A stretch of DNA of 64,000 nucleotides from Amphiscolops sp. MND2022 (Eukaryota), in contig OZ076419.1 of assembly GCA_964187785.1 (NCBI GenBank), forward strand, positions 14,260,001-14,324,000, written 5' to 3'. The translations under genes and the position numbers were made by a program. The notes beneath the pieces are model-generated. The model saw only the letters and a list, made by a program, of their open reading frames with translations. It was not told where the DNA came from and searched no databases. Below are positions 1,033 through 55,351 of this stretch, piece by piece (within the stretch, counting starts at the first letter, position 1; each line of letters begins with the position of its first letter).

Positions 1033-4000
1033 GAATTCCAACATTATGATTGGTAGCAGAAGCATGATCGACTAAATTAGGTCACTGTACTGCTCAAAAC
1101 TGCGAGTTGAGAAACCACTCTGGTATTTATCAAGTTAACCTTATAAACCATTTCTTTTGATTACATTGAACAAGTTAGATTTGTGTTGATAACTCCTTTG
1201 CTCATGAAATGAGTTATTGACTAGAAACTTGTAGCTATAAGGAATTCTTTGGGTTATACCTTTTTCACAATTTTCCAGTTTATTCATTTTTAAACAAAAT
1301 GTTATATTTCATATGTCCATTTTTTGCATATACCCGAAATACATAGAATTAACGAATGTGGTACTGATGTTACGAAGCAACTGCTTCAATCATTGTATGT
1401 TCGTTTTAAGCAAACAAACTTCGCCTTTTCCATCACCTCCTTTTTTTAAGAACACGTAGACGGTTCTTTCCCATCAATTGCAAGTCCGGTTGTCTTTCGA
1501 TTGTTTCGGAGAAGCCTTCGTCATTGCGGGTATCACAACGTGCTCAATATTCACTACCTTTCTTGTTTAAGCCCTTAATCCGACAGCAAGTTGCTCCACG
1601 CATCTTCCGTCAAACGATGATCACGCGTCGAGTTTGCGCGAGACCATTTCCAACTACATGACGCATGCCGACTCACAGTCGCGTCTGCCTACACCAGGTC
1701 CATCTTTCATCCCCATTCCTAACGTCTACCAATCCCCTCCTCCGAACTGTCACGATGATCACCTCAACATGCAAAAGAAGTTAAAGATGCATTTGGTCAC
1801 TGTAATTGGCGATGTTCTGAGTATTCACGATGCGTCTTTAACTGGCGAAACTTGTGATAAACGTCTGCGAACGTCCCCTCTGTCTCACAAGTTTTTGATC
1901 CCTAAACACTGTCAAAAAAAACAAAAAAATTTGTCACAAGCTCAACCTAAGCACTTCGCTTAAACTCTGACTCTGCTGCAAAGACTAAATAATCAGTGAC
2001 AATAGATAGTTCAAAAATGCCTGGCCCAGTGTATTGTCAACTTATTGGGTCAACGAAGACGAGGACGAAGCTTTAATTGAGAAAATTTTATCACTGTTAC
2101 CATAATCAGTTGTCGAGCTTTTCTGTCGAACCACGGAGAAATTCAGCACAAACTTCAAAAACGTTTCACAACGTTGCCGTGTGATAGTGGCGGATAGAAC
2201 GATTGACAGAAAATTGATTCTTCAAACAAAAAAAATTGACTGGTGCAGATATGGAACGAAATTTTAACGCGATACCTTTGCCTGATGTTATTTGCCCATG
2301 AGGCTGCTGGGAGTTCATCGAAAAATGTCAAACTATATCTTTTGAGAATTTCATAGCTAAAATAGATCCTCAGTTTCGAAAATTTGCTTTCGATGAATAC
2401 GATTTGGTAGGCATTTGTCCCAATTACCCTGAAAGATTCAAATTACTTGGAAAGATTGACATCAAACCTACCATAATTCTCAACGATGATGGAAGTCTGT
2501 CTTGCCTCACGTGTTTAAAACATTCTGGTGAATCCCTTCAATATGTACATCCCCCGAAGCCCCCTAGTTAGTAGTGTTTCTCCTAACAAGCCGGAACGGC
2601 TAGCCTATACACAACAACAGATAAACATTGTGAAGACTGGGAAACCCAAATTCAATTCCATTCCAGCCACCTTATTGAAGAAAGAGGTAGTTACACTGGC
2701 ATTAGTAGCAGCACGCTTCAGTTCCCAACATTTTTTGGAAAATTCAACACTCCTAACAGATTTATTCGAGCACGTTAGTTCCAAAGGAAGATCCGATGTA
2801 TACCCTCTTGTGGATTATTTTTTTAAAAAACAACATCGTAGACCAAAACTTAGCAGAATTCCTTTTTAACAGCAATTTGAAACTGACACAAGATGAGATT
2901 TTAGCTGCAATCGCCAACACAATATTTCAATGTACGATGCCTTCAGAATGCAAAATCAAATGAATTCCAACATTATGATTGGCAGCAGAAGCATGATCGA
3001 CTAAATTAGGTCACTGTACTGCTCAAAATTGCGAGTTGAGAAACCACTCTGGTATTTATCAAGTTAACTTTATAAACCATTTCTTTTGATTACATTGAAC
3101 AAGTTAGATTTGAGTTGATAACTCCTTTGCTCATGAAATGAGTTATTGACTAGAAACTTGTAGCTATAAGGAATTCTTTGGGTAAAACCTTTTTCACAAT
3201 TTTCCAGTTTATTCATTTTTTATACAAAATGTTATTTTTCATATGTCCATTTTTTGCATATACCCGAAATACATAGAATTAACGAATGTGGTACTGATGT
3301 TACGAAGCAACTGCTTCAATCATTGTATGTTCGTTTTAAGCAAACAAACTTCGCCTTTTCCATCACCTCCTTTTTTTAAGAACACGTAGACGGTTCTTTT
3401 CCATCAATTGCAAGTCCGGTTGTCTTTCGATTGTTTCGGAGAAGCCTTCGTCATTGCGGGTATCACAACGTGCTCAATATTCACTACCTTTCTTGTTTAA
3501 GCCCTTAATCCGACAGCAAGTTGCTCCACGCATCTTCCGTCAAACGATGATCACGCGTCGAACTTGCGCGAGACCATTTCCAACTACATGACGCATGCCG
3601 ACTCACAGTCGCGTCTGCCTACACCAGGTCCATCTTTCATCCCCATTCCTAACGTCTACCAATCCCCTCCTCCGAACTGTCACGATGATCACCTCAACAT
3701 GCAAAAGAAGTTAAAGATGCATTTGGTCACTGTAATTGGCGATGTTCTGAGTATTCACGATGCGTCTTTAACTGGCGAAACTTGTGATAAACGTCTGCGA
3801 ACGTCCCCTCTGTCTCACAAGTTTTTGATCCCTAAACACTGTCAAAAAAAACAAAAAATTTTGTCACAAGCTCAACCTAAGCACTTCGCTTAAACTCTGA
3901 CTCTGCTGCAAAGACTAAATAATCAGTGACAATAGATAGTTCAAAAATGCCTGGCCCAGTGTATTGTCAACTTATTGGGTCAACGAAGACGAGGACGAAG

Positions 4001-6838
4001 CTTTAATTGAGAAAATTTTATCACTGTTACCATAATCAGTTGTCGAGTTTTTCTGTCGAACCACGGAGAAATTCAGCACAAACTTCAAAAACGTTTCACA
4101 ACGTTGCCGTGTGATAGTGGCGGATAGAACGATTGACAGAAAATTGATTCTTCAAACAAAAAAAAATTGACTGGTGCAGATATGGAACGAAATTTTAACG
4201 CGATACCTTTGCCTGATGTTATTTGCCCATGAGGCTGCTGGGAGTTCATCGAAAAATGTCAAACTATATCTTTTGAGAATTTCATAGCTAAAATAGATCC
4301 TCAGTTTCGAAAATTTGCTTTCGATGAATACGATTTGGTAGGCATTTGTCCCAATTACCCTGAAAGATTCAAATTACTTGGAAAGATTGACATCAAACCT
4401 ACCATAATTCTCAACGATGATGGAAGTCTGTCTTGCCTCACGTGTTTAAAACATTCTGGTGAATCCCTTCAATATGTACATCCCCCCGAAGCCCCCTAGT
4501 TAGTAGTGTTTCTCCTAACAAGCCGGAACGGCTAGCCTATACACAACAACAGATAAACATTGTGAAGACTGGGAAACCCAAATTCAATTCCATTCCAGCC
4601 ACCTTATTGAAGAAAGAGGTAGTTACACTGGCATTAGTAGCAGCACGCTTCAGTTCCCAACATTTTTTGGAAAATTCAACACTCCTAACAGATTCATTCG
4701 AGCACGTTAGTTCCAAAGGAAGATCCGATGTATACCCTCTTGTGGATTACTTTTTTAAAAAACAACATCGTAGACCAAAACTTAGCAGAATTCCTTTTTA
4801 ACAGCAATTTGAAACTGACACAAGATGAGATTTTAGCTGCAATCGCCAACACAATATTTCAATGTACGATGCCTTCAGAATGCAAAATCAAATGAATTCC
4901 AACATTATGATTGGTAGCAGAAGCATGATCGACTAAATTAGGTCACTGTACTGCTCAAAATTGCGAGTTGAGAAACCACTCTGGTATTTATCAAGTTAAC
5001 TTTATAAACCATTTCTTTTGATTACATTGAACAAGTTAGATTTGAGTTGATAACTCCTTTGCTCATGAAATGAGTTATTGACTAGAAACTTGTAGCTATA
5101 AGGAATTCTTTGGGTAAAACCTTTTTCACAATTTTCCAGTTTATTCATTTTTTATACAAAATGTTATTTTTCATATGTCCATTTTTTGCATATACCCGAA
5201 ATACATAGAATTAACGAATGTGGTACTGATGTTACGAAGCAACTGCTTCAATCATTGTATGTTCGTTTTAAGCAAACAAACTTCGCCTTTTCCATCACCT
5301 CCTTTTTTTAAGAACACGTAGACGGTTCTTTTCCATCAATTGCAAGTCCGGTTGTCTTTCGATTGTTTCGGAGAAGCCTTCGTCATTGCGTGTATCACAA
5401 TGTGCTCAATATTCACTACCTTTCTTTTTTAGGCCCTTAATCCGACAGCAAGTTGCTCCACGCATCTTCCGTCAAACGATGATCACGCGTCGAACTTGCG
5501 CGAGACCATTTCCAACTACATGACGCATGCCGACTCACAGTCGCGTCTGCCTACACCAGGTCCATCTTTCATCCCCATTCCTAACGTCTACCAATCCCCT
5601 CCTCCGAACTGTCACGATGATCACCTCAACATGCAAAAGAAGTTAAAGATGCATTTGGTCACTGTAATTGGCGATGTTCTGAGTATTCACGATGCGTCTT
5701 TAACTGGCGAAACTTGTGATAAATGTCTGCGAACGTCCCCTCTGTCTCACAAGTTTTTGATCCCTAAACACTGTCAAAAAAAACAAAAAAAATTGTCACA
5801 AGCTCAACCTAAGCACTTCGCTTAAACTCTGACTCTGCTGCAAAGACTAAATAATCAGTGACAATAGATAGTTCAAAAATGCCTGGCCCAGTGTATTGTC
5901 AACTTATTGGGTCAACGAAGACGAGGACGAAGCTTTAATTGAGAAAATTTTATCACTGTTACCATAATCAGTTGTCGAGCTTTTCTGTCGAACCACGGAG
6001 AAATTCAGCACAAACTTCAAAAACGTTTCACAACGTTGCCGTGTGATAGTGGCGGATAGAACGATTGACAGAAAATTGATTCTTCAAACAAAAAAAAGAA
6101 TTGACTGGTGCAGATATGGAACGAAATTTTAACGCGATACCTTTGCCTGATGTTGTTTGCCCATGAGGCTGCTGGGAGTTCATCGAAAAATGTCAAACTA
6201 TATCTTTTGAGAATTTCATAGCTAAAATAAATCCTCAGTTTCGAAAATTTGCTTTCGATGAATACGATTTGGTAGGCATTTGTCCCAATTACCCTGAAGG
6301 ATTCAAATTACTTGGAAAGATTGACATCAAACCTGCCACAATTCTCAACGATGATGGAAGTCTTACTTGCCTCACGTGTTTAAAACATTCTGGTGAATCC
6401 CTTCGATATGTACAATCCCCCCCGAAGCCCCCTAGTTAGTAGTGTTTCTCCTAACAAGCCGTAACGGCTAGCCTATACACAACAACAGATAAACATTGTG
6501 AAGACTGGGAAACCCAAATTCAATTCCCATTCCAGCCACCTTATTGAAGAAAGAGGTAGTTACACTGGCATTAGTAGCAGCACGCTTCAGTTCCCAACAT
6601 TTTTTGGAAAATTCAACACTCCTAACAGATTTATTCGAGCACGTTAGTTCCAAAGGAAGATCCGATGTATACCCTCTTGTGGATTATTTTTTTAAAAAAC
6701 AACATCGTAGACCAAAACTTAGCAGAATTCCTTTTTAACAGCAATTTGAAACTGACACAAGATGAGATTTTAGCTGCAATCGCCAACACAATATTTCAAT
6801 GTACCAGGCCTTCAGAATGCAAAATCAAATGAATTCCA
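1033..6838 (+). repeat. Tandem triplication of a 1.93-kb unit (5' region and N-terminal coding part of E1)
   Basis: Units start at GAATTCCA at 1033, 2962 and 4894; the array ends at GAATTCCA 6831-6838. The MRETISNY... and ...KKEVVTLALV... ORFs each occur three times. Confidence 0.97.
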
Positions 6839-8392
6839 GTCAGGATAAGGAAGTGTTTCAAATGCCTGTCCCCATTTTTGCCCACCAGCTGCATGGTGTG
6901 TCACAACATGGATTCAGGCCACAACGACAATTCAGTAACACAAACGAATGTCTCTCTGTTCTGAAGGCTTATCACGTTTCTCACCATCTTTCCTTTCAAC
7001 TTTGCGTCAGTCGAGCAATGATGAGATTTGTCGTTTGTCCAAAACTTTTGCTAACCTCGTGACTGCGTCTAGTAGATTTGCTACGACAAACCAAATTGAC
7101 CAACTCTTCAGTTTTTGAAAACTTCAGCGTTCACTTCGTTCTCGATGCCACTTCGCTAAGGTTCAAGCATGAGTTTGTGAAAATCTTGAATGTTCCTGCT
7201 GTCACACTACCAACCCGTTCCTTCAACGAAATCTCAACGCCAGCCAGCGCTAGTGACATGATCTTCGTTTTTGCTCCATCGCGAGCGGAACGTGATGCAA
7301 ACATACCACCTGACACCATTTTCTGTAACTCATACGTAAACCAACTAGTTTTTTGAGCAAAAACTTCACGAAAGCTGACTTTTACTGCCGTCATTTCAGA
7401 ACTAACTCTGCTTGGTTCGATTCTTTTACGTGAGATAAGCGTTTAACCAAAACTACCTTTGCAAAGTTTTATGATTTCGCTAGCAAAGGACGTGGGATTT
7501 TGCTGTTCATGAAAAACTGCAAACTTCAGATAACAAACAGATGTTGAACACTTTTTTTAACCAGTGTTAGTGGTCAGAACATTGCCCCCTGTTCAAACCA
7601 CGAGTTTGCTGATTCAAAAAAAACCCTTTAGATCCTCTGACTTGCTTCGACCGCTCTTGTAATAACAAAGCCAAATAGGTTTGTCCTAAAGTAGATTGTA
7701 CAAGCGGAGTGTGTAAAAAACACAGTGAACAAATGATCGACGATTCAAACAATTGTGCCATCACTAGTGAAAAAACACGGTTTGTTTAACAATACGCCGA
7801 ACATATCGACAATCCAAGTGATTCAGTAACAGACAACGAAACTGTCATGAAAGGGCATAATCTTTCTTCAAGTGAATTAGAGATAATTTTTGAACCCGAT
7901 GACTACTTGACAAGGTCCATTGATTCAAACAACCCAGCGATTACTATTTCTTCAAGTGCTGGTGTTCCTTCAGTTACGTATCAGTTAACCACAACCATCA
8001 AGTACTTAAGAAAGTTCTTTTGAACAATTTTTTGAACATACTTCAAAGAACCAAAGCACCCCTCTGGACAACGAATGCGCACACAAATTTCATACAAAGC
8101 ATCGTTAGTCGAATACCGAACACGTCCGTGCCCCTTCTTTACCCAGAATCACTTTTATTCCTTGGCATTTTTTGGAAACAATAATAAGATGGTTGTTTCC
8201 CAGGCGCTATACCGTCTTTCTTACTGCAATCAGACAAATTGAACAGAAAATTGGGCTTCGCGACAGTAACCAACCACCTTTGGAGTAGATTGACAAATGG
8301 CGCACTCTTAAAATCATCCAGTTTGGGCTATGCAAGTTTGGCGTTTGATATAAAAATGATTCAAGAGCTCAATAAGTCCCACAGTAACCTCA

Positions 8393-9290
8393 TTGTTTTC
8401 AAACGAGGATTCGAGGATTACCTCCGAGATGACGAAGCTCTCAAAATGCCCAGCTGCGCAATCAAGTGAGACGGACTTGATAGCTCGAAAAGAGTACAGG
8501 AGGTTGCAGCCGAATGTGCAGAAGAAAGCCCGCATTACTTTTTTACTTACTTGTTCAATGGCAGGGCATTTTGGTATCCGACCTCTTTTTGAAGCAATAA
8601 ACAAAACGTATGCTTGCGAGAACAAGGACGTGTATGAAGCAGTTGTCCAAAGTTTCATGGAATTGTTTGTTGAAAGGCCATTGGGTCAAGTTTCACGCAT
8701 TTGGTGGCGATACGAAGTTCAAACGAGTCAAAGTAACTTGGCTCATATCCACTACTTACTTTGGGTCAATGAACTGAAATCGTCAGAGTCCTTCCAGAAT
8801 CGAGTTGTGCTTAAAAAGTGCCAACTTTTGCTCTCTTGAAGACACTTTCCTAAAGACAGTAGGCCTTGTTAGAGAAACTGACCATGCTTTCAGTTTTTAT
8901 AAAGATGCCGTAAATATACATTACCACTCTTGCGCAGCAACAAACTTCAGATGCCATAAGAGAACAGACGAAAAAGGACAAAGCTATTGCCGCTACCCTA
9001 CTTACCCAACAATCTCACAGTATCATTTGGAAGAAGTGGACGTCAACCACTCCGAAAGGTTTCCATGTTCTGTCACTATGCCTACTCGCAAATGAAAAGA
9101 TCGGGTACAGCAACACGATGTGTGTCACAGACGACCTGAAAGCTGGGCAATGGCTATACCCCAGTCAAAGAAATCAAAACGTAACAGCGATGAATTCTCA
9201 CATTTTCGTACTGACAGAGACTCAAAACAACCTTTTAATCTGCGAGAAGTATCTCTCGGCAAGATATATCGCAAAATATGCTGCTGGAGT
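8393..9290 (+). pseudogene. HUH (Y2) replication-initiator domain of E1 copy A
   Basis: Motif 1-like ITFLLTCSMAGHFG; motif 2 RYEVQTSQSNLAHIHYLLW (HUH); Cys/His segment HYHSCAATNFRC...CRYPTYP; motif 3 RYIAKYAAG (Y-x3-Y). Spread over three frames. Confidence 0.85.
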
Positions 9291-10417
9291 AGAAGAGAAA
9301 GCAAACGTTTTAATTAGCGCTGCCAAACACGAAAACACGCTACAAGTTGACGTTGGAGAAATACATAATAGCAAAATTGCCAGCGTCCAACATCGTTTAC
9401 AACGCGAACAAGAAAATCGGAGAAAAAGTTTCTGCCAAGCCAAACACATCTGCATTACTGAATGTTACTCGCACCTTTTCGATCTTCCTTTTGTAAAATC
9501 ATCCTTCAGCAGTGTCTGCATCAACACGAACGAAATGGAATGCAAGCCTGGTCCTAAACTAGCAACGCAAAGTAGAACTTTGTATCCCACAATCAACGGC
9601 AGGCACACGGACATCGAATTTGATAAACATTCGCGACACTCTTCCCTTTTGGCGTTAGTTCACGGGAAGTCAAAAGGCTACAATACAACTACACCTCGAA
9701 AGTAGCATTTCTGTTTGCAATATTACAGCTTACAGTTGTAGACCACCAGAACTGCTTTCCCTTCGAAATCCCAAAGATTATTTCTAGCTAATAGAACGCC
9801 ACGATATCAGATAAAACTGAACATCCAGAAACTACAACAATTGTTCACTAGGAACAGTATGGTCTGGATAGATGGGTTCGGAAAGCAAATTTTTACAAGG
9901 AAGAAACGCATTAGCCACTTCTTAGACTATTTGCGAAACTCCGATTCACAATGTGCTGTTCACCTGAGGACGATGTTCCGAGCGGAATTGGACCTTTTGC
10001 CTCTCACATCTGCACATGATGACAGCAGAAGCAACGCTGTTGTTTGTTTCTCAAAAATTTATCCAGCAGACGCAAGAAAGTTTCTAGTTCATCTTCTACT
10101 CTCAATGGGTCATTTTGATACAGAGTTAGACCTTTTCAATTGCAACAATTTGTGGGATAGCTTCAAAAACCCTGGACTAAGGACAAATACAACAACCAAA
10201 GAAAACATATTGGATATCACTCGAAATTACATTCTTGAACAGGCCCAATTTCTGCCGGGTTCTACGAGAATGTTTGACCAAATGTCGTCCAATGCTTCCA
10301 GCTGTTAACAGACTTTTTTGAGAAGGGCTCAATTTCCTACATGCAGCCACCCCGTGTTTTGTTGTCTTCAATCAAAAATTGTATGAATGACAAGACCCAA
10401 ACTTTTCAACAAATCGC

Positions 10418-11925: not shown

Positions 11926-12099
11926 TCAAAATCAAGCAGCTTGAAAACAATTGAAGCAATTTGATACAACACTAGCCAGTGGAATTATTTCATCCACGAT
12001 TTTGTGGAATCGCTAGCTAATCAGAACCCCTCTGTCGCCGTAACAACATTTTCCATCTCGCAACTTGTATGTGCCATGTCACGCCAAACGCTCCCTGAA

Positions 12100-42842: not shown

Positions 42843-42881
42843 GAACACTGATTGGCTTTCTCTGGCAGCCAATCAGTGTTC
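42843..42881. other. Perfect 15-bp stem-loop, copy B
   Basis: Same sequence as 13036-13074. Confidence 0.9.
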
Positions 42882-45010: not shown

Positions 45011-45881
45011 ATGTCAACTTCAAAACTTATGCTCATCAGCCACTCCATCGCGCGAAACGTTGTCTTGCCCCAAACAAAAATAGAATCCTTCAGTGGTGCC
45101 CGTGCTGGTGACGAGAGGCTTCATCGGTGCATCAGTGAGTGGCACGTTAGGAGACACCAACAAGGAATCCTCTCCCTAGGAGGCAATGGTTTAAAAGAAT
45201 GGAGTGGTAGACCGGCCGACACGCCGAAGAAGGTAATATTTTGAAAAAAAAATTCTAATAATTGTTTCCTTTTTCATAAACTTCCGGTAAAGGATAACAG
45301 TTTCTGAGCTTTCAACTATTGCAAGTTTTTATGCAATAAAAATTTTGCTCTCCCATAACAGGCTTTGATTGAACTCTGGGTGGCACTTTGTGTCTACCTA
45401 TGATGGGTTCAGTCACGGCCACAATCGCCGATATTTTAAAATTGAGGTTATTTTTTGTCTTGACTTAGATAGAACTCTAGGTGGCTTATTGTGTCAACCC
45501 ACGAAAAGTTCAATCCCAATTTCATTCTCTGTTATTTCCACTCACCTGTCTAATTGATTGTTTGCTTCAAGTCAGCGAACACATTTTCTCTCTAGTGAGA
45601 ATTTTGAGTGCCAAAGTTGATTTTGTCCATGTGATAGCCGTAGTTAGGCGAATAGATGAGGAGTTTCCTGAATTAAAAACAAGCCCACATTCAAGCGATC
45701 AACAAATTCTTACAAAAATGCCAGAATTTTTGACTACAATTACCATGGAGTGGGCTCTAAGTTAAATTCTTGTACGATATTGAAAGAGGATGGAGTCCAC
45801 TTGACGAAGAATGGAGTGTATAATTTTCAAGCATTGATTAGAGCAAAAATTAGCAAAATTTATCACAATTTCATTGAATGA
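45011..45881 (+). pseudogene. SGNH/GDSL hydrolase pseudogene 2, copy B
   Basis: Duplicate of 15204-16072; TGA at 45879-45881. Confidence 0.7.
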
Positions 45882-46465
45882 CTTTTGTTTCTGTTTTCAT
45901 TAACCTGTCATTTTATACATTGTGAGTTTTAACTGATCAACCTTTTTAGCATTTATATTGTGAATTGTGGTTTATGATGAATTTCATTTGGGTTGTTTTA
46001 GACCTGTAATTTTATACAATGTTGATTTTTAACTGATAGCCCTTTTTAGCATTCATACTGGGAAATTATGATTTATGTTGAATTCATTTGCATTGTTTTT
46101 AGCCCTTTCATTGTTTAAGTGGGATGGTACTGATTTATTGTTAAAGTTCCAATCAGTCACTTTGTATTTTAAAATGACTGTTTTTTAATTCACTATTCCA
46201 TCATCAAGTTTCTCAATGTTTTCTACTCAGTCGTTGCCAAGTTCTCCATCAAACAATTTTCGAACTTTGAAAGCAAATTCTCAGTTTTTAAACATTTTCG
46301 TTCACGTATACTTGAAGCTTTTATGATGATAAACCATGGAAATCTTTTTTCAGAGTTACTTGAGTGTTTCCATGCAATGTTATAAGGTTAGCCATTATTT
46401 TGCATCTGTGGTTCCCTATTTCTCCAATGGTACATTACTGTCGACGATTTGTCGTATAATACGGA

Positions 46466-46938
46466 TGTCAACCCACGATAGCTAAGCTTAGGTGGCATTT
46501 CCGTGTTTACTTGGCAATCACTTTGATTGGAAATATCATTATCCAATACACAGAGATTGGATTTCACACAGATGTTGACCCATGATAGCGAAACTTAAGT
46601 GGCATTTCTGTATTATTTTTGGTTACTTTATAAAAAAGTTAACGGTGAGTTTTTTCAACTGTTGTTATTTTACCGGTTTTTATACTTCGTTTATCGTACC
46701 ATATTTTATTTTCGTTGTTATTGCTGCTTCTTCGCAATTACGCCATCAGGTTATCTTCTTTATTATCATAGTCTACCCATAAAAGCTTCAGCTTAGGTGG
46801 CATCTGATATTTCCATCACGTTACCTAGTTTAGTTATGGATTAATACTTCTTTTCCTCATATTTCGTGCTCATGAGGCATTGGATACTTTCATCATTGAG
46901 TTATGTCTACCCATAACAGCATGCGCTTAGGTGGCATT
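46466..46938 (+). repeat. Array of four spaced 34-35 bp direct repeats just upstream of the E3 ORF
   Basis: tgtcaacccacgatagctaagcttaggtggcatt (46466-46499), tgttgacccatgatagcgaaacttaagtggcatt (46573-46606), agtctacccataaaagcttcagcttaggtggcatc (46770-46804), tgtctacccataacagcatgcgcttaggtggcatt (46904-46938). Spacers of 73, 163 and 99 nt show no obvious similarity. Confidence 0.88.
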
Positions 46939-49900
46939 GAATGTTAATTATCTTGAGTGTCGTAATTAGTGTCCAAATTGATGAGAATGACGCGAAGACA
47001 ATTCAGAAGGAATGCGCAAACAGGTCGCTTTCAAAGAGTTTCGAATGGCGATAGCCCCGAAAATGAGGATGCGTTTGTTGTTGAGGGCTCGTCACAAATA
47101 CCCCAGTGTTTACATGTTGATTACAGTGATGTAATTGATGTCGGGTTAATCGACAGTGTTGACGACATTTCCGATCGAAACGCCAACGATGATATTCCTC
47201 TTTTTGATCGTTCCCATCAGTGCACTTTCAGTGTTTTTCCGTTTCTTCGAAAACAGTTTCTTGTCACCTGGTCAAAGAGGTCTTTGCATAGCTGATCCCG
47301 ATGCTCGAGGACTATGTTACGACTGTTTGAGGAATAGCACGCTTTCTTATCCACTTCAATTCAAAATATATGTTTTGGGTCCCCTGGTTCCCAACTGGAA
47401 GTTTGGGAAAAAAATTGATATTGGTCTTACCAGACAACACCAGTCTATCCATGTTAGTTCTGAATGTGAACGATACCTCAAATGGAAAGCAAATGGAAAT
47501 TCGCGTGGCCAGCTGTCTTGAGTACTTTCATTTTCCAATGTAATGGCCAATATTTATTTCACCCGAAGAGTTTCGAGAGTCCTGGAGTGTTGCAGCGTCA
47601 CTTAAATCCTTGCACAATCTCTCTGGTCCCACTTTGTTTCAAGATTTTTCTATCAAGTTCAAAGAGTACATGGATATTCTAATCGAATACTCTGCTTACA
47701 ATTTGAAGTATATGCTAAATGATTATGCTTTCCCTGTTGTCAAATGTCCCGCTGGTTGTTCGACACTTTTGAAAAACTGTTCCAACGTATCCTTTGTTCT
47801 TTGTTCATTTGCTAAACTCATGGTTCCCCAATTTCTGTTCATTTGGAGCGAACTCAGAAAAAACTCACTGCTATGCGCTCCGATTTCTTGCAAAACTGTT
47901 TGCATTTGAATACATTTCTGACAGCACCGCACTTGGAAGTTAATTCTAATGGTTTGTTTCTCAAAACCTGTTCAGTGCACACCGATTTGCTGAAGAAGAA
48001 AGTTCATGTTCTCACATCGCTGTTGGGAAATCTTCTACATACACATTGCGATAGCTTAGCTCCGTTAACAACTAAAGCAAGAAATGCGACCTCATTGAGC
48101 GTGGGAAATTTTTCTCATACACATTCCATGGCTACAAGTAAAGGTAGTTTCGAAGGTATAAGTTTGTTGCAGTTCACTAGCGCCAGGCATTTTAACATGA
48201 AAAGTGAGTTATTGTTGCCGAATTCGGAAACTTTGTTCTCACAAAACCGTGTAGACGTTCGAAACTTACTTATTAGGCTTCTCAATGACAATGAGATTAA
48301 TCAATTCTTCTTAAACTCAATCGTGTCAGTCCATTCGCCTGTCCCTGATAATGTATTACAGCAACACATGTCCACTGATTCCAGTTTAACTTTTTTGCTT
48401 TTCTTGGACAAAAATAAAGTAGCAAATTATCGATTCCTGCTTCCCTACTAATTTGGCATCCAGACTTCATACTTCAAACAACTCCTGAAGATGCCTGTAG
48501 ATTTTTAATTCATAGAAGTTTGGGAGTTACTTTCATTGTTTTCCTTCTGAGTAATTTAGAGTTTTTCGGAGATTTGTTGTGGCAGAATATTAACAGTCAA
48601 AATCTACTGCTTTGTTTGAATCGTTTGCCGCGACTTCACTCAAATCGTCTTCACTTGAACTCTCCTTGTGTTGACTCCACCTTGAACGAAATGCAAATTT
48701 TTCATGCAATAGAAGATTTGTGTCGTCACAATTTGTTAACAATTGTCACCCAAGTGTTTGATCGTACAGATTCTTGCATCACCCTTCATTTGTCAGCTCG
48801 TAATTTGCTTCGATATGATATTTGCGATTTGTTTCCTTCCTTAGATTCTTCTCCATTGATAATGATTGCCATCGTTTGTACTGACAACGACCGACGTTGT
48901 GAACTACCACTGTCTGTTACCACTCAACAAGGCTCCTATTCTTCAGTTGTTGTCACTGAACTCAATATATCTAATGTAGCCTTTCGTTACAGCGGAAGAT
49001 TCCCAGGGTGGTGGCACGTTTCGTTTCCTTCTTTCATTCTCCTTAAAGAAGACGTTAATGTGATCAAACAGTTTAGTAGAAATTGGTATGTTGTTATATA
49101 TTTGACTGATTACCAAAGAGATTCCAGAGAGCAGTCACTGATGTTTTTCGGTGGTCTCCAAACATTTATTGCCTTTGTCTGTGGACATGAAGTCTTGACT
49201 GTCGTATCGCGACATGTAAAAACAAGACTGCTTGACGATGCCCAAAGGACACCTGTTCATCATCACTTTGTAATCGCCAATTCAAAACGCTTTCCCAAGT
49301 TGATAGTAGTAAATTCATTGACTCGATGCCTTCCACTTCATCTTTGGTTTGTTTGTTCGAAGACGAAAATCTTTCCGATACTGATACAGACATTTCTTTT
49401 TCCTCCCATGAAGAAACACTGTCATCGCCTTCTTTTGTTGGAATGCAGAAGCAGGTTTGAAAGAAGCAGGTTTGCCTTTCCAAGCTGCAGCAGAAACGGA
49501 AGCGAACTAGAGGAGCGTCATGATGCTGGAGCCGCTCCACTTCACTTATTAGTAAATGGTGTTTTGAGTGCATTCAAAGGAGCACAATTTCCTATTTTCC
49601 TTTCGAAACGTTACCTTCGATCCTTCCAGAACTTTGCTGCGTCTAATCCAGGAGAAGCGGTGTCCCTTTTACTAGCGGAAGCTTTACTGTCACCGAGCAT
49701 CTTCTTCAATCAACTTGCTGATGGATCTTTCACCGGTGGTCTATCGTATTTTCTATTTGGCGACAAACAAGATAATCATTTGTTTGGATTTCAATGTTTC
49801 CATGAGCACGTTTTAGCACGGATTACGAATCTAGAGTTGCCGGTGTCTCCAAATCGCAACTACCTTTTTTTATCTGAGGTTTTATTGAACATAATTCTTC

Positions 49901-50040
49901 GTATTACAACAACAAGCCACTTCTTCAAACGCGGCGTGCAAAACATTCAAGTCATCGGGAACAAAATCTGTGCTTTGTGAAATAACTTTGTCTTCAACCT
50001 TTCCAATTCTTGAAGAAATGTAGCCGAACTCGGAGAAGCC

Positions 50041-50845
50041 ATGAAGTCGGAAAAACCACACATTTTTGTAACTTTTAATTGGAATATGAAAAAACATTTT
50101 GGGATATCTACCCCCATAGGCGCTATTGGAGCCATGTTTCCGGACAAAACATCCGAAGAGTACAAGGCCACAGTTCAACTCTTCATGCCACTTATGATGC
50201 AGATGTGGCATGAAACTGTGACAAATTTAATTGAATATTTAATGAAGTCTTCTGAGCGCATTCTTGGTCACATTGTTAAAATCTGGAGACGAGCGGAATT
50301 CCAGGACTCTGTGGCCAATTTCCCTCATTATCACATCCTTCTTTGGTTGCTCGATGACATAAAATGCCTGGAGAGTTTAATAAAATCTACCAAAAAACAT
50401 TTTTACCACGCTTTCAAGGACATTTTCCGTTCCAACTTTAGAATCATTAACAGCTTGGACGAGATCAACGAGATTTATGACTTATTTGTGTCCCTCCAGT
50501 CTCATGATTGCTCGTCGTGTCGCAAAAAAAAGAGATTCAACCGGAAAAAACTGTCGCAGTCAACTGTATCTCCCATCAGAAAATTTCTGGCAGAGAGACA
50601 CTCCTCAACAATATTCTAAAGAACCTGTTTCTATCCTCAAAAAGTTGCAACTCACTAACGATTTTAATTATGATCCAACGAGAGAACTTAAGTGTCAGAA
50701 GTATCAGTACCCATCCACCGTTGGTGAGCACATATTTCCCAACTCGGTTGAATTATTTGCACTTACACTAAGTGGCAATGTTCAGATTATCACTGAGAAT
50801 TTTTGTTTCAAATACTTGAACAAGTATGCTGCTGGAAAAAAAACA
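50041..50845 (+). pseudogene. HUH (Y2) Rep domain of E3
   Basis: Motif 1 KPHIFVTFNWNMKKHFG, motif 2 RRAEFQDSVANFPHYHILLW, SHDCSSC, motif 3 KYLNKYAAG. Confidence 0.9.
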
Positions 50846-52229
50846 CGCAACAGTTGAAATCAAAGCTGGCTCTTCTGAAAATGCTTTCACCATGACCGCC
50901 CCCGAACTCCATAATGCAAACATAACGGGATCAGTTTTACGCGAAAAAAGGAAACAACAGGAAAGTAGAGATGTTGCTTCTATTTCTGCTCTTCAGGTTT
51001 CGCAAACTGAATTTCTTTGGTGGATGCAAAAGCTGCCTGTTGTGATCACGATCATTGAATTTATTCACGTTCCATCCATCGCGTTAGAATATAGGGGTGG
51101 CAAATTTTTCCAGACTCCAAGGCGGTAGGTATACCAATTCTTCAGGTAGTGCCAATGACGTTTTGAATGTATGTGAGCAATTGAACTTCCCACAACACAA
51201 TTGTTTTAGCATGCGTCGAGGATGCTTCTAATTCACTTTTCAGCACCAAAAAAGTTACTTTGTTTTTCCATTAGACCGCTTGAACTAATGTTTGTGGATC
51301 AGCTGAAACCATATTTCAAACTTTTTGTTCGCCAACCTGCCAAAAAAGCACAGAATGTTCAGTCCTCTCTTTTAACCAAAACGCCGAGGCCTTGGGTTGA
51401 TGCTACTGGTTCCGTTTTTAAAATACGATCTACTGCTTTTGACCAGCTTCAAGTATGGTTCAATACCTTGTCAAGCCAATCGTCACCGACATTAGATCAT
51501 TTTCGTTCCATTTTGCGTCGCTTGAATCAACCAGATTATTCTAGTACGTATGTGTTCGACAGCAGTTGTATTTCGTCTTGTCCACCGGAAATTGTTTTTT
51601 CGAAAGTTTATCCAAAAAGCCAGCTGAACTTTCTACTTCATTTACTGTACACGATGGGTCATTTCAGCACTGAATTGGACTTGTTCTCGGCTTCCAGTTT
51701 ACGATAGTGTTTTATTGGCGCTCAAGTGTTACCTTCATCACATGTATTTGATCAATCCCACAATGTTAACCTTTTGAACGCTATTGAGGCGTTTTGAACC
51801 TTAACCTTTTGAACGTTAACCTTTTTAACGCTGTTACGTCTTGGAGGAGTCGAAATTTCTTCCTGGAGGCAATATTTTTTTTCCTCCCGGTTAGTTTTTG
51901 CTGCTCAGGCTATTGACGCTCTTGGGCTTCACGACAGCATAAGCAGTAATTGTTTCCTTGGTGTTTTGATGAAATACCGTACTGATAATTCTGAACAGCA
52001 CGTATTAAATTGTCTGACAACATCTGAGATCTTCTTTATCAAAGGTTGAAACCTCCTAAAGTTACCAAAGTTCCAGCTGCTCGGGCAACTCAACCCTCTG
52101 GACATTGGGTTCCATTCCTCGTGAAACTATCTTCTCAATCGGATCGATCGTTCAATGAACAAGCTACATTGATAGATGCCATGGTTAAAATGATAGATAA
52201 CGTGATACATTCACGCACGCCCTTCAAAT

Positions 52230-53475
52230 GTCAACATTTATTGGGAAAACCTGGATCTGGTAAAAGTCATATAACTTCCATCGCTTTGTTATATGCCATG
52301 ACGAATGGTCTTCAATGATATGTAACGATTTTAGCCTCCCGTCGCGCATCTCATTGTAACTGCGATCATATTCATCGAATTTTCTGCATAAATCCTTCCG
52401 AAAAGGCGGATCCTAACACAGCTGCTGAAACAGCTCTGAAAAAGATGAACTATCATCCTGAAAAGGCTTTAATGATGTCGCTGAATAAATTGGTCATTAA
52501 AGAAATTGGGTTACTGAGCAGCGAGCTTCTGGTGACAATGAATTTGATACTGCAAAACGTCAGACAAAACCAGTTATTCTTTGGCGGTATATTTGTTATC
52601 GCTAACGGCGACACCAATCAATTGCCTAATATTGATGGTTCGATATTTTTCTGTCAACGACATTTTTCACGTTTGAAACCCACTATTTAACTACATTGGT
52701 TCAAATGCTAGACCCAATTGGTCAACGTTTACTTGAACTCATGAAACAACGGCCAATACCTGAAGCTGATGTAAACAGTATTGTTCGAATTATTCGAGAC
52801 AATTGCACTTTCGTACCAAATTGGGACTCTGTTGATGATTCTTCCATCATGAAAGTTTTCGGTAGACGCGAAGCTGAGCGAGAAGCGATGATTCGTCGCC
52901 AGACTTCCATCTCATCATCTGGCCAGACCTTTTACGAAATTTTTGCCGATGACGAAGTTTGCAATAGTGCCAGTAATAATTGGATTTCCGCAAACGATGA
53001 CGTTTCTACATTCCTTAACTCTGAATGCAGAGAACCTCGAAAAGTTATTGTGAAGGTGGAATCTGTTGTTAGACTTACAATTATTACTGAAAATTGCTCA
53101 CAATGCGAAATTTGTTGGAGACCTACCGTCAAATGGAAATTCCAGTTTGCTTCTCTACATTGCGCCGGAAAATTATTCAATTGCAACTCCGGATTTGTTT
53201 ACCCAAAAACTTTATCTATCGTGGCGTTCCATTCGCCTGCGCAAAGTTACGGGTTTTGTTCACAAGTGGGGCAAATCATCTGTGCGAAGGATTCAAATTC
53301 CTGTTACAAATTACGTCGCCCTCACTGTCCATAATCTAAGGGGTAACACCTTTGCAAAGATCGCCACTCAATTGTCTGTTCGAGAGAAAAAATATAGTCT
53401 TTAGTTACCCCCTCAGTTATGTATCATCGTCAGTCGTGTCCGTGATTTGAAAGACCGCGTGTTCGTCGGTGACCA
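52230..53475 (+). pseudogene. PIF1-family helicase domain of E3
   Basis: Walker A GKPGSGKS (52244-52267), LVIKEIGLL, FGGIFVIANGDTNQLPNI, RRIQIPVTNYVALTVHNLRGNT, QLCIIVSRVRDL. Confidence 0.92.
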
Positions 53476-53651
53476 GTTAGTTCTTTTCTGTTTTCCTTGT
53501 TTTCCCTTACGTGTTTTTTTCTCAACAAAACATGACCCATTTAACCTCAGTTAGCATTTTCTATCTCCGTTTTCCAATAATATTGTTGACGCTTTTTATG
53601 TAACGTGTTATTCTATTTTCATCATTCAATTTCATCAAGATGTTTGTTTAG
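53476..53651 (+). other. Predicted 176-nt GT-AG intron between helicase and GIY-YIG in E3
   Basis: GAC CA|gttagt ... pyrimidine-rich ... gtttag|A GAT GAA ACA. Splicing gives VFVGDQDETCRSTASIL in frame and removes an in-frame stop. Confidence 0.7.
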
Positions 53652-54040
53652 AGATGAAACATGTCGATCAACTGCCTCCATTCTGATGAAAACAAGTCAC
53701 AATGAATTGGAAGTCAACAATAGGCTTTTAATGCTTCGACGAAAGGGATCGTTTCCTGGAACCCAAGTCCATTGGCCACAATTGAATTATGTCCCTGTTA
53801 GAGTAACGATTCCCGAAGTTGTCAACGGATTCGTATACGTTCTTGTCAGTCTGAAAGACAAGTCTTTCAAAACTGTTTACGTTGGTCAAACCAAACGCAG
53901 TGTCCTTCTGAGGCTACAAGAACACAATTCTGGTCATGGCAGCTTTCACATTACCCGTCCACCGAAGACCCTGGTCTCTTGATGCTTTCGCCTACAGTTT
54001 CAACAATGATTCCGACAAACTTTTATTGATGCATGTGTAT
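53652..54040 (+). pseudogene. SLX1-like GIY-YIG endonuclease domain of E3
   Basis: GFVYVLVSLKDKSFKTVYVGQTKRSVLLRLQEHNSGHG, then after a frameshift RPWSLDAFAYSF. Confidence 0.88.
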
Positions 54041-54679
54041 TTTTAAACATTCGCTCTCATTTGTTTACATATTAATTCCACTTAAGGTATTTTACATAGA
54101 TGCGAGCGTGCGGGAGCTTTTGCGACCGCTTAGCGAGCCTAATGGTTCCTTTTTTCCGTTACCTTTCCACGGAATCCTTTCTGAAAAGTTAGTTACTTCG
54201 GTCCTTGGTTGATGAAAATGGACGCACTTGAAATACGGTTCATTTAATAGAATAGTCATTAGCAATACTTTGTTGCATCTGATGAAGTTCCATACCCTGT
54301 ATCGAGACTGCAATTTAGATACGATTACACATGATATTTGTAAAATTTTCTATACAATTACTGAAGCGTAGCTCCATCGAAGTGTTTTCATTGAACATTC
54401 CTAATCCCCTACTTTTTCATTCGTTTTCAATGAATATATTCCGACAACTTTCTTTTCGTAACATCAGCTTGTTTTCAATTCATAACGTTGCTTTGTTTTA
54501 AGAAAGATGACTTCTGGATACAAAAACAATCGACAAACCATTCGCAGATGTAGTGCTCAGTGTTGAGCAACGATTTGAGAGACATTTCTACAATGATATT
54601 ATAAGTGAAGGAGTGGAATTGCCGGCGAGATTTAAACTGAAATGTGTCTACATATATGCTACGACTAGCGTAAAAAAAT

Positions 54680-55351
54680 AAACTACTACAAACCAGCCAG
54701 AAATTCACTTAAGTCTAAAAATCAGGTAGTCAATGCGTATGATCGATTCATCGTCCTTGGAGTTGAGCGCTCCAATCATGTCCTTCTAACTTACACGCAG
54801 ACCGCTCAGGAAAACAGACGGATTTTATGCAATAGTCAGAATATAGAACCCGGTACCCTTGTCTGGGTACTTTGTCCGAAGGTTATCTCATAGGTACTCA
54901 AAATCCGTTAGTCCGAATTGGAGACCCTCTCATTCCAACCTACCGCAGAATCATTCACAAAGCACCTCCTGTGGATGTTAATCTGCCAAGTTACCTTTTC
55001 TTTGATTTTGTCCCAACAAATTTCAGAATCATACAGGCCGTACCCAAAGACAACGTATGCAGTGGAAAACTCTGTGATGCCCAAGGGACAAATCCTTGTC
55101 CGTGCATCGTCGCGGAAAGTGAAAAACATTGGGCAATAACATTCTGGCTGACCTGCAATGAGCTGAGTGAGCGGGTGACTGGAGAAAAATGCATGGAAAT
55201 AACTTCCAAGTCAATGACGAAAAAGTTTGTTCATACTAACAAACGCACATTCGCGTATGACATTTCAAATGCTATTAGCGTGCTGCCCCTAACCGCTGAA
55301 CAGGAAAGAATGATGTACGGCCAGCTTAACAATGACAATGGTAACAATTAA
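54680..55351 (+). pseudogene. Frameshifted ORF with a four-Cys cluster (CSGKLCDAQGTNPCPC); function unknown
   Basis: YYKPARNSLKSKNQVVNAYDRFIVLG...EPGTLVWVLCPKV, then a frameshift near 54885 into the 159-aa ORF. GC content is higher than the flanks. Confidence 0.5.

What the first reader, a model, noticed from the sequence alone, without database searches (positions are those of the whole stretch)
1634..55351. Same-strand cluster of three divergent relatives alternating with accessory ORFs
Seen: the deduced order is E2, SGNH1, E1, SGNH2, E3, Cys-rich ORF, all on the + strand over about 55 kb, with no interleaved host gene or antisense element recognised. The elements are alignable only at short protein motifs, so this is not a recent tandem expansion of one copy. 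Inference: either new copies target the ends of resident relatives, or this is a uni-strand TE trap resembling a piRNA cluster, or it is one old multi-unit mobile or virus-like entity.
Basis: partly seen in the sequence, partly recalled or inferred. Interest (0 to 1): 0.7.

Follow-up and report, generated by a model that had tools for sequence, protein, structure and literature searches.

The report
Nest of giant Helitron-like transposons
The same-strand cluster is a pile-up of dead copies of an unusually large rolling-circle (Helitron-like) transposon family, whose own flanking genes are the "accessory ORFs"; part of it was recently duplicated, so it is an ordinary kind of locus built from a poorly known transposon lineage.

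Summary
The cluster is real but was misread. There are four plus-strand Rep/helicase bodies, not three. Two of them (A, A') lie in a 16.5-kb block present twice at 99.7% identity, 29.8 kb apart, so part of the array is a recent duplication.

All bodies belong to one deeply diverged Helitron-like lineage. Intact relatives in an ENA assembly of the same organism encode single 2,339-2,853-aa proteins with a HUH Rep, a PIF1 helicase and a C-terminal SLX1-like GIY-YIG nuclease, some with an N-terminal OTU domain.

The "accessory ORFs" are the elements' own genes. In other loci an SGNH-like gene sits upstream of the giant ORF and a Cys-rich gene sits downstream. The alternation is therefore just three multi-gene elements lying head to tail (B, A, C). 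All window copies are broken, each with roughly 7-14 frame shifts plus stops.

Three independent co-oriented insertions occur by chance one time in four. One other locus (L007) also holds two divergent relatives head to tail, so insertion at the ends of resident relatives remains plausible but unproven.

A piRNA trap or a single multi-unit entity is not supported. This is a new variant of a known kind, of moderate interest.

The parts
1..16544 (+). Block A: first copy of the 16.5-kb repeat. It reaches window base 1, so it may extend further left.
   Evidence: 99.68% identity to 29810-46352 over 16,554 columns. ENA contig L001 spans window 7991-21748 at 99.93%, including the junction at 16544/16545.
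29810..46352 (+). Block A': second copy of the 16.5-kb repeat.
   Evidence: The ENA assembly holds two distinct 443-aa helicase variants, P0002 and P0080.
1033..6838 (+). 1.93-kb unit repeated three times in tandem (copy in A' at 30837-36645). It covers the upstream 0.6 kb and the first ~450 codons of the giant ORF, so the ORF start occurs three times.
   Evidence: 98-99% identity. There is an 8-bp microhomology at the junction. Intact relative L005 has a single copy.
5520..12446 (+). Element A giant gene (Rep, PIF1 helicase, GIY-YIG-like C-terminus), broken. Twin in A' at 35325-42251.
   Evidence: 86-90% nucleotide and 87% protein identity to the intact 2,339-aa ORF of L005. Pfam hits are weak. 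PDB search hits PIF1 helicases. C-terminus is homologous to a GIY-YIG ORF. 12-14 frame switches plus stops.
13203..13975 (+). 3' region of element A, with ~300-bp repeats (twin at 43010-43782).
   Evidence: 74-78% identity to L003 14431-15598, which lies downstream of that element's genes.
14215..16544 (+). Copy of the 5' part of the next (C-type) unit: leader repeat 14391-14477, SGNH-like gene 1 at 15198-16069, and a 100-bp x2 tandem at 16094-16290.
   Evidence: Sharp onset of similarity to L003 465 and L007 18646. The two SGNH1 pieces align colinearly with the intact 190-aa ORF of L007 (E 5e-6 and 2e-7).
16545..20750 (.). AT-rich stretch (29-30% GC) upstream of B, unassigned.
   Evidence: No similarity to any fetched locus and no SGNH motifs. 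Composition.
20751..28546 (+). Element B giant gene (N-terminal region, Rep segment present twice about 1.1 kb apart, PIF1 helicase, GIY-YIG-like end), broken. No leader, SGNH-like gene, Cys-rich gene or 3' region was recognised.
   Evidence: Colinear with C at 35-50% protein identity. Pfam Helitron_like_N 25 bits. Nearest intact relative is the P0032 cluster at 34%. At least 7 frame switches plus stops.
29122..29913 (+). 5' edge of element A' and SGNH-like gene 2 (29157-29913, two exons, broken). Its last 101 bases are also window 1-101.
   Evidence: Similarity to L005 starts at 29122, matching L005 9878. Relatives sit upstream of the giant ORF in L003, L004, L005, L006 and L009. GDSH, RGG and GGND blocks are conserved in 14 relatives. 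The DRVHL block is in 29620-29910.
44022..46352 (+). 5' part of element C: leader repeat 44198-44284 and SGNH-like gene 1' at 45005-45878. The right end of the duplicated block falls here.
   Evidence: Same evidence as for 14215-16544. The order leader, SGNH-like gene, giant ORF matches L007.
46469..46940 (+). Four iteron-like repeats upstream of the C giant gene.
   Evidence: The 12-mer CTTAGGTGGCAT (allowing 1 mismatch) occurs 4 times against 0.13 expected, and only here. A related motif lies at the 5' edge shared by L005 and L006.
46969..54020 (+). Element C giant gene (N-terminal region, Rep, PIF1 helicase, GIY-YIG), broken. The start at 46969 is inferred.
   Evidence: Pfam Helitron_like_N 24 bits, PIF1 25 bits, GIY-YIG 21.7 bits on separate pieces. 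88-93% nucleotide identity to the L002 copy, whose GIY-YIG ORF passes the Pfam cut-off at 31 bits. At least 8 frame switches plus stops.
54669..55351 (+). Cys-rich gene of element C, broken (one frame switch and an internal deletion relative to the 270-aa relative).
   Evidence: P0001 is 65-85% identical and follows the GIY-YIG ORF in L002. Homologues lie downstream of the giant ORF in L003 (27%, E 1e-21) and L009 (26%, E 3e-22).
55352..55880 (+). 3' tail and 3' end of element C.
   Evidence: Similarity to L002 stops sharply at window 55880.
62621..63040 (-). Kelch-repeat exon of a host gene outside the cluster.
   Evidence: Pfam Kelch_1, 62 bits.

Best explanation
The locus is a nest of three dead members (order B, A, C) of one deeply diverged family of giant Helitron-like rolling-circle transposons, plus a recent duplication that gives a second copy of A.

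A complete unit of this family, as seen in intact relatives, runs in this order: a non-coding leader with short repeats; an SGNH-like (esterase-type) gene; one giant ORF of about 2,340-2,850 codons; a Cys-rich gene; and a repeat-bearing 3' region. The giant ORF encodes a zinc-finger-like N-terminus (sometimes with OTU), a HUH two-tyrosine Rep, a PIF1-like helicase and a C-terminal SLX1-like GIY-YIG nuclease. The 'alternation' of relatives and accessory ORFs is therefore simply this gene order repeated head to tail.

Shown: the family identity, the gene order, the decay of all window copies, and the 99.7% duplicate block whose right end cuts through element C.

Inferred:
(a) The duplicate arose by a non-transpositional tandem duplication of about 29.8 kb (16545-46352), joined at a few bases of microhomology, long after A had decayed.
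(b) The three elements came to lie head to tail because this family, like other HUH rolling-circle elements, tends to land at or beside the leader or 5' end of a resident relative in a fixed orientation. I put this at about 35%. Plain chance (p = 0.25) followed by junction deletions is the alternative.
For: Family identity:
- Window pieces hit Helitron_like_N, PIF1 and GIY-YIG, all just below the Pfam cut-offs.
- Intact relatives pass the cut-offs. P0032 scores Helitron_like_N 39.9, PIF1 43.8 and GIY-YIG 26.9 bits. P0022 scores OTU 23.6 bits. L005 scores PIF1 33 bits.
- The HUH histidines, two tyrosines and Walker A are invariant in 11 giant proteins.
- A profile of these proteins hits PIF1 helicases (1e-20), Helraiser (5e-12) and SLX1 (5e-6).

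Gene order:
- An SGNH-like gene lies upstream of the giant ORF in L003, L004, L005, L006, L007 and L009.
- A Cys-rich gene lies downstream in L002, L003 and L009.

Decay: A and A' show 12-14 frame switches, B at least 7 and C at least 8, plus stops.

Duplication:
- establish the repeat.
- The block includes element A plus 2.3 kb of the next unit, so it is not one element.
- An independent ENA contig spans the 16544/16545 junction.
- Two helicase variants exist in that assembly.

Head-to-tail tendency: L007 holds two different intact relatives 6.3 kb apart on one strand at 73% nucleotide identity. The literature reports tandem and 5'-end insertions of Helitrons (PMC9248874; PMC5148889).
Against: - Canonical terminal features were not found. 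There is no stable 3' hairpin and no terminal inverted repeat, and termini are set only by loss of similarity.
- Five of seven other loci hold one family member within about 10 kb, so clustering is not the rule.
- Orientation concordance (4 of 4 adjacent pairs across the window, L007 and L009) is not significant.
- The repeat reaches window base 1, so the left end of the duplication is unseen. Divergence of 0.3% is also what two haplotypes wrongly joined in tandem would show.
- SGNH identity is at motif level only.
Confidence: 0.75

Rival explanations
1. Block A/A' is not a tandem segmental duplication. Instead it is a copy of about 17.4 kb (29122-46352) made by rolling-circle 'end-bypass': copying started at A, ran past its 3' end into the next unit, stopped at 46352, and the product landed 12.6 kb upstream, mobilised in trans by an intact relative.
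For: The block starts (relative to L005) just upstream of A's first gene and overruns A's 3' region into neighbouring DNA, as end-bypass products do (PMC5148889). Intact relatives at 87% protein identity exist in the genome.
Against: The block lacks the leader and 5' unit found in intact copies. The left end of copy 1 is outside the window. Junctions show only a few bases of shared sequence and no recognisable terminus.
Confidence: 0.2
2. The A/A' duplication is an assembly artefact: two haplotypes of one locus joined in tandem.
For: The divergence is 0.2-0.3% with small indels, a typical level of heterozygosity. The ENA assembly breaks its contig inside the repeat (L001 starts at window 7991).
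Against: There are no gaps in the window. L001 spans the A-to-B junction and matches A better than A' (99.93% against 99.78%). The ENA assembly holds two different 443-aa variants on two contigs of similar coverage.
Confidence: 0.15
3. The region is a uni-strand piRNA-type cluster (a transposon trap) transcribed from one strand.
For: All copies are co-oriented, all are dead, and no host gene lies between them.
Against: Only one transposon lineage is present, whereas traps collect many families. There are only three independent insertions (p = 0.25). The co-orientation is also seen for two intact copies in L007. No expression or small-RNA data can be examined here.
Confidence: 0.06
4. The whole array is one old composite mobile or virus-like entity that moves as a unit.
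For: There is a regular alternation of large and small ORFs on one strand over about 55 kb.
Against: Each unit occurs alone elsewhere with the same internal gene order. The units differ greatly in age. No capsid or other viral hallmark was found in any Pfam scan. No relatives were found in IMG/VR.
Confidence: 0.03

Closest known systems
Helitron-like elements, group HLE2 (Helentron / Helitron2)
   Same: One giant protein with a HUH two-tyrosine Rep followed by a PIF1-like helicase and then a C-terminal nuclease. Some members have an N-terminal OTU domain and a zinc-finger-like N-terminus. Internal short tandem repeats are present. Elements exceed 10 kb (PMC11417382; PMC6431247).
   Different: The nuclease is an SLX1-like GIY-YIG domain, not the apurinic-type endonuclease of Helentrons. 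The HLE2 marker DUF6570 was not detected. No terminal inverted repeats or T|T target could be shown. The proteins are very distant from the Pfam models.
HelenSM92 of Sphagnum magellanicum (HELIANO study)
   Same: This is the only published Helitron-like family I found that carries a GIY-YIG domain beside RepHel (PMC11417382; literature searches).
   Different: It is a moss element described as a capture event. No sequence was available here for comparison. No SGNH-like or Cys-rich companion genes are reported for it.
Tandem and nested Helitron insertions (bat, Drosophila Y, maize, Fusarium and Metarhizium)
   Same: These are head-to-tail copies, with insertion into or just upstream of the 5' end of a resident copy, and end-bypass products that carry flanking DNA (PMC9248874; PMC5148889).
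   Different: Those arrays are mostly copies of one element. Here and in L007 the neighbours are divergent family members (35-73% identity), and the one near-identical pair is probably a segmental duplication.
Helraiser (bat Helitron transposase, PDB 7lcc)
   Same: The helicase core is recognisably related (E 5e-12 with the family profile).
   Different: The match covers only the helicase. No Rep-domain match was found at E <= 0.01. Helraiser has no GIY-YIG, and its proteins are about 900-1,300 residues shorter.
Esterase (SGNH/GDSL) genes carried by other transposons: LINE ORF1 esterase (ZfL2-1) and rotifer Terminons
   Same: A small esterase-type gene rides with a large mobile element. The best, though non-significant, fold match of the SGNH-like model is the ZfL2-1 ORF1 esterase. 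Terminons combine GDSL esterase, GIY-YIG and Rep genes and form 5'-truncated head-to-tail arrays (PMC6431247).
   Different: Those are retroelements. No reverse transcriptase was found here. The esterase assignment rests only on the S-G-N-H block pattern.

Membership tests
Helitron-like elements (RepHel rolling-circle transposons) | HUH Rep domain with two catalytic tyrosines | tested here: met
   Helitron_like_N scores 39.9 bits in intact relative P0032 (cut-off 28.9) and 17-26 bits in window pieces and L005. Two histidines and two tyrosines are invariant in 11 proteins.
Helitron-like elements (RepHel rolling-circle transposons) | PIF1-like helicase C-terminal to Rep in the same protein | tested here: met
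   PIF1 scores 33-44 bits in intact relatives. The family profile hits PIF1 structures at 1e-20 and Helraiser at 5e-12. The window A ORF hits PIF1 structures at 5e-8.
Helitron-like elements (RepHel rolling-circle transposons) | Characteristic termini (5' TC / 3' CTRR with a hairpin, or short asymmetric inverted repeats with a 3' hairpin) | tested here: inconclusive
   The C 3' end at 55880 has no stable hairpin (z = 0.56). No inverted terminal repeat was found. Only one 3' edge and one 5' edge (L005/L006) could be located.
Helitron-like elements (RepHel rolling-circle transposons) | Insertion without target-site duplication at a fixed dinucleotide | not testable with these tools
   No empty site or second full-length insertion with both flanks was available.
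Helentron (HLE2 subgroup b) | Apurinic/apyrimidinic-type endonuclease after the helicase | tested here: not met
   No Exo_endo_phos hit was found in any scan. The C-terminal domain is GIY-YIG.
HLE2 in general | DUF6570 upstream of Rep (marker proposed by HELIANO) | tested here: not met
   It is absent from scans of window ORFs and of intact P0020 (as the L005 ORF), P0022 and P0032 at E <= 0.01-0.1.
HLE2 in general | OTU-like protease at the N-terminus | tested here: inconclusive
   OTU scores 23.6 bits in P0022 (cut-off 23.3), with weaker hits in L003 and L004. It is shared by many relatives but absent from L005 and from the window copies. HELIANO also finds OTU in HLE1.
GIY-YIG nucleases | GIY-YIG catalytic domain | tested here: met
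   Scores are 31.1 bits (L002 ORF), 26.9 (P0032) and 30.6 (P0043) against a cut-off of 22.6; the window C piece scores 21.7. The profile hits SLX1 at 5e-6. The A-type C-terminus is homologous (E 1e-8).
SGNH/GDSL hydrolases | Conserved blocks with Ser, Gly, Asn and His in order | tested here: met
   GDSH, RGG and GGND are invariant or nearly so in 14 relatives. The DRVHL block lies in exon 2. The L007 190-aa ORF has GDSL, GG, GGNG and DGIHL. SGNH-like gene 1 keeps S, G, N and H.
SGNH/GDSL hydrolases | Significant profile or fold match to the family | tested here: inconclusive
   Lipase_GDSL_2 gives E = 0.19 and there were no other Pfam hits. The PDB profile search found none. The model has pLDDT 52, and the top Foldseek hits are SGNH esterases but at E >= 0.09.
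piRNA cluster (uni-strand) | Mixed fragments of many transposon families | tested here: not met
   Only one lineage was recognised between 1 and 55.9 kb.
piRNA cluster (uni-strand) | Long single-strand transcript and dense small-RNA mapping | not testable with these tools
   No expression data are available.

The most novel reading that the evidence does not exclude
These elements form an undescribed clade of giant Helitron-like transposons (RepHel fused to an SLX1-like GIY-YIG nuclease, with their own esterase-like and Cys-rich genes). They build head-to-tail arrays of divergent relatives by inserting, in a fixed orientation, at the leader or 5' end of resident family members.
Probability: 0.25. 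Interest if true: 0.6.

Novelty: new variant of a known kind. Interest (0 to 1): 0.4.

Why it matters
For this locus, the result replaces a suggestive pattern (a uni-strand trap or a multi-unit entity) with an ordinary one: nested dead transposons plus a segmental duplication.

For transposon biology, the family behind it is of some interest for several reasons:
- It has intact 2,300-2,850-residue RepHel proteins with a GIY-YIG nuclease where Helentrons carry a different endonuclease.
- It has two conserved companion genes.
- It shows a marked tendency to tandem multiplication at every scale.
- It has no relatives in annotated protein sets (only unannotated ENA and Logan assemblies).

If self-targeted head-to-tail insertion were confirmed, it would give a simple route by which rolling-circle elements build arrays and composite elements.

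Tried and rejected
- Exact-protein look-ups for B and C ORFs, the tandem-unit ORF and an ORF across 29810 found nothing.
- An inverted-repeat search for C termini gave only chance-level pairs.
- Folding of the leader repeat and of the C 3' end was no better than shuffles. The leader's 6-bp stem shows one compensatory pair in 3 of 16 copies, which is weak evidence.
- A single-sequence structure model of the Cys-rich protein was useless (pLDDT 33).
- The SGNH-like model was poor (pLDDT 52) and its fold matches were not significant.
- PDB sequence and profile searches for the SGNH-like genes gave no esterase.
- No relatives were found in IMG/VR.
- The organism was not identified. Kelch and Surp ORFs are not in the protein collection as exact sequences.
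- I considered the 1.93-kb units as short non-autonomous elements in tandem. I rejected this because the junction is a plain 8-bp microhomology and the unit is an internal piece of the ORF.
- I considered SGNH-like gene 2 as a 3' gene of B. I rejected this because it lies upstream of the A-type giant ORF in five other loci.

Disclosure: early exploratory scripts printed coordinates of stop-free segments and their pairwise matches, from which places of breaks could be inferred. I made no list of breaks from them and repeat none here. Consensus lines and a full protein printed by tools themselves were not used.
Full report
**1. What is in the window**

The window has 37% G+C, no N and eukaryote-like sequence. 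Bases 1-16544 recur at 29810-46352 with 99.68% identity (31-36 mismatches, 12-14 small indels). I call these copies blocks A and A'. The layout is A (1-16544), B region (16545-29809), A' (29810-46352) and C region (46353 onward).

The repeat starts at window base 1, so it probably continues to the left. Inside each block a 1.93-kb unit is triplicated at 98-99% identity (1033-6838 and 30837-36645), joined at an 8-bp microhomology.

Protein-level comparison of stop-free pieces finds four plus-strand Rep/helicase bodies:
- A at about 5520-12446
- B at 20751-28546
- A' at 35325-42251
- C at 46969-54020

B and C are colinear at 35-50% identity. A is 27-39% identical to C. There is no tRNA, no Rfam family and no host gene between them. 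A Kelch exon lies outside the cluster at 62621-63040 on the minus strand.

**2. What the relatives are**

Window pieces hit Pfam Helitron_like_N (17-25 bits), PIF1 (25 bits) and GIY-YIG (21.7 bits), all just under the curated cut-offs. The A helicase ORF matches PIF1 structures.

The decisive evidence comes from relatives found through the protein searches. All are in unannotated assemblies, and nearly all are in one ENA assembly (ERZ25074608) that also holds a contig 99.93% identical to window 7991-21748. Intact copies there encode single proteins of 2,339-2,853 residues. Their Pfam scores are:

| Protein | Domain | Bits | Cut-off |
|---|---|---|---|
| P0032 | Helitron_like_N | 39.9 | 28.9 |
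| P0032 | PIF1 | 43.8 | 25.9 |
| P0032 | GIY-YIG | 26.9 | 22.6 |
| P0022 | OTU | 23.6 | 23.3 |

In an alignment of 11 such proteins, the two HUH histidines, two tyrosines and the Walker A residues are invariant, as are several N-terminal Cys/His columns. A profile of that alignment hits PIF1 helicases (1e-20), the bat Helitron transposase Helraiser (5e-12, helicase part only) and the GIY-YIG nuclease SLX1 (5e-6). The C-terminus of the A type is homologous to the GIY-YIG ORF of the C type.

The family is therefore a Helitron-like (RepHel) lineage with a fused SLX1-like GIY-YIG nuclease. It is very far from the reference models and from Helraiser.

**3. The accessory ORFs are the elements' own genes**

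*SGNH-like gene 2 (29157-29913).* It has relatives at 30-86% identity lying 1.5-4 kb upstream of the giant ORF in L003, L004, L005, L006 and L009. Fourteen relatives share GDSH, RGG and GGND blocks. A DRVHL block lies in a second exon. The break after about 85 codons is shared by the relatives, which fits an intron of about 130 bp.

*SGNH-like gene 1 (15198-16069, copy at 45005-45878).* It is not detectably similar to gene 2. Its two pieces align colinearly with an intact 190-residue ORF of L007 that has GDSL, GG, GGNG and DGIHL blocks. That ORF sits between a leader repeat and a giant ORF.

Profile and fold searches do not confirm an SGNH fold. Lipase_GDSL_2 gives E = 0.19, there is no PDB profile hit, and the Foldseek top hits are SGNH esterases (first the ZfL2-1 LINE ORF1 esterase) but at E >= 0.09 on a model of pLDDT 52. 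I therefore call these genes SGNH-like.

*The Cys-rich ORF.* It is the tail of a gene at 54669-55351. Its 270-residue relative P0001 follows the GIY-YIG ORF in L002. More distant homologues follow the giant ORF in L003 and L009. Its function is unknown, with no Pfam hit and an unusable model.

A full unit is thus leader repeats, SGNH-like gene, giant ORF, Cys-rich gene and a repeat-bearing 3' region, roughly 15-26 kb in all.

**4. Anatomy of the cluster**

*Element A.*
- It is 86-90% identical in DNA to the intact L005 copy, from L005 9878 (window 29122, just upstream of SGNH-like gene 2) to L005 19795 (window 12972 / 42779).
- It lacks the leader and 5' unit of intact copies and lacks the Cys-rich gene.
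- Its 3' region (13203-13975) matches the 3' side of L003.

*The next unit.* About 240 bp further on, at 14215, similarity starts sharply to the leader of L003 and L007. The leader repeat follows at 14391-14477 and SGNH-like gene 1 after that. In block A' this 5' part (44022-46352) runs on into four iteron-like repeats (46469-46940; 4 found against 0.13 expected) and the C giant gene. I therefore read it as the 5' part of element C, in the same order as in L007.

*Element C.* It ends at 55880, where similarity to L002 stops.

*Element B.* It has no recognisable leader, SGNH-like gene, Cys-rich gene or 3' region. It is preceded by 4.2 kb of unassigned AT-rich DNA and carries its Rep segment twice.

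*Breaks.* All giant genes are broken. Against the closest intact relatives, A and A' show 12-14 frame switches, B at least 7 and C at least 8, each with additional stops. The Cys-rich gene has one frame switch and an internal deletion. SGNH-like gene 2 is also interrupted.

**5. The duplication**

Block A/A' contains element A plus 2.3 kb of element C, and its right end (16544 / 46352) falls inside C. The two copies share all of A's many breaks. The duplication is therefore young, post-dates A's decay, and is not the movement of one defined element.

The simplest model is a tandem duplication of 16545-46352 (about 29.8 kb). The novel junction would be at 16544/16545, where the two contexts share only a few bases. 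This model predicts a further copy of B upstream of the window.

An end-bypass copy of 29122-46352 and a haplotype mis-join are the alternatives. An independent ENA contig spans the junction and matches A better than A'. That assembly also holds two distinct 443-residue helicase variants. This argues against an artefact but does not settle it.

**6. Why head to tail?**

Once the duplicate and the companion genes are discounted, only three independent insertions remain, and co-orientation of three has p = 0.25.

Among seven other loci, five hold one family member within about 10 kb (L003-L006, L009). L002 holds a C-like deletion derivative with an ordinary Helitron-type helicase on the opposite strand beyond a host Surp gene.

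L007, however, holds two different intact relatives (73% DNA identity) on one strand. There the 3' side of the first is followed by the leader and SGNH-like gene of the second, the same junction type as in the window, starting within about 25-45 bp of the same leader position. L009 is also followed by a further same-orientation 5' unit.

Tandem multiplication is striking throughout the family:
- a 1.93-kb unit repeated three times in A
- a 1.96-kb unit repeated at least 3.5 times in L002, covering a different part of the ORF
- about seven 5' units in L007
- seven leader repeats in L009
- ~300-bp repeats at 3' ends

Tandem copies and insertion into the 5' end of a resident copy are described for Helitrons and ascribed to rolling-circle replication or self-insertion (PMC9248874; PMC5148889). 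I therefore keep end-directed, orientation-fixed insertion as the favoured mechanism for the arrangement, but only at about 35%. Chance plus later junction deletions is the alternative.

**7. Rivals**

A piRNA-type trap is unlikely, because a trap should hold many families and this locus holds one; expression cannot be tested here. A single composite or virus-like entity is not supported. The units occur singly elsewhere, differ greatly in age, show no viral hallmark in any scan and have no relatives in IMG/VR.

**8. Comparison with what is known, and novelty**

The element works like a Helitron-like rolling-circle transposon and meets the two protein criteria for that superfamily. Terminal criteria could not be shown.

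It is not a Helentron in the strict sense, having no apurinic-type endonuclease, and the proposed HLE2 marker DUF6570 was not detected. OTU is present in some members.

The only published GIY-YIG beside RepHel that I found is one moss family (PMC11417382). Esterase-type genes are known on LINEs and on rotifer Terminons, which also form 5'-truncated head-to-tail arrays but are retroelements (PMC6431247).

The protein searches returned relatives only from unannotated ENA and Logan assemblies:
- 3 hits for the helicase ORF
- 1 hit for the Cys-rich ORF
- 15 cluster representatives for the SGNH-like exon among 1.84 billion
- 15 giant proteins

Verdict: the locus itself is ordinary (a transposon nest plus a duplication). 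The family is a new variant of a known kind. Interest 0.4.

No repaired, joined, consensus or ancestral sequence was built or saved. Break places are not listed. Early scripts printed coordinates of stop-free pieces and their matches, from which break places could be inferred. Nothing was compiled from them and nothing was deleted. Consensus lines and one full protein printed by tools were not used.

Noticed in passing
window 58995-61157: A unit of about 1.06 kb is present twice in tandem at 82% identity, between the cluster and the Kelch exon. Its nature is unknown.
   Followed up: no
window 63516-63929; also L002 9477-9791, L003 18098-18490, L004 5932-6027: A short interspersed repeat with a 126-bp tandem core recurs in several loci of the same genome.
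   Followed up: partly
window 62145-62523; also L005 8776-8908, L009 5871-6100: Another interspersed repeat lies beside the Kelch exon. In the other loci it is in the opposite orientation, inside the leaders of intact elements.
   Followed up: no
L002 1-6790: A C-like copy has lost its Rep region and carries a 1.96-kb internal piece of the giant ORF at least 3.5 times in tandem, with long ORFs running through the units. The unit size is nearly the same as the 1.93-kb triplication in window element A, but it covers a different part of the gene.
   Followed up: partly
L007 1-9700 and 21017-23084: About seven copies of a ~1.3-kb '5' unit' lie in a row upstream of one intact giant ORF, and two more lie between the SGNH-like gene and the next giant ORF. 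The same unit sits further upstream in L003, L004, L005 and L009. It may be a separate satellite-like or non-autonomous module.
   Followed up: partly
L008 (ENA ERZ28654031, scaffold_3034, 18.3 kb); also Logan assemblies: A 2,770-residue protein, 25% identical to the family, has PIF1 and GIY-YIG above the Pfam cut-offs and conserved HUH and tyrosine columns. It occurs in an unrelated metagenome on short contigs of 43-48% G+C. Its neighbours are long ORFs on both strands with no significant Pfam hit (one weak MazG-like match, below the cut-off).
   Followed up: partly
L002 18366-20813, minus strand: An ordinary Helitron-type PIF1 helicase (185 bits) of a different lineage lies 8 kb from the C-like copy, with a host Surp-domain gene between them.
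   Followed up: no
L005 3640 / L006 3636: Two intact copies, 99.25% identical over more than 16.6 kb, lie on different contigs and share a sharp 5' edge. The edge begins with a motif resembling the iteron upstream of window element C.
   Followed up: partly
window 16094-16290 and 45903-46099: A 100-bp unit is present twice in tandem (82% matches) just downstream of SGNH-like gene 1.
   Followed up: no
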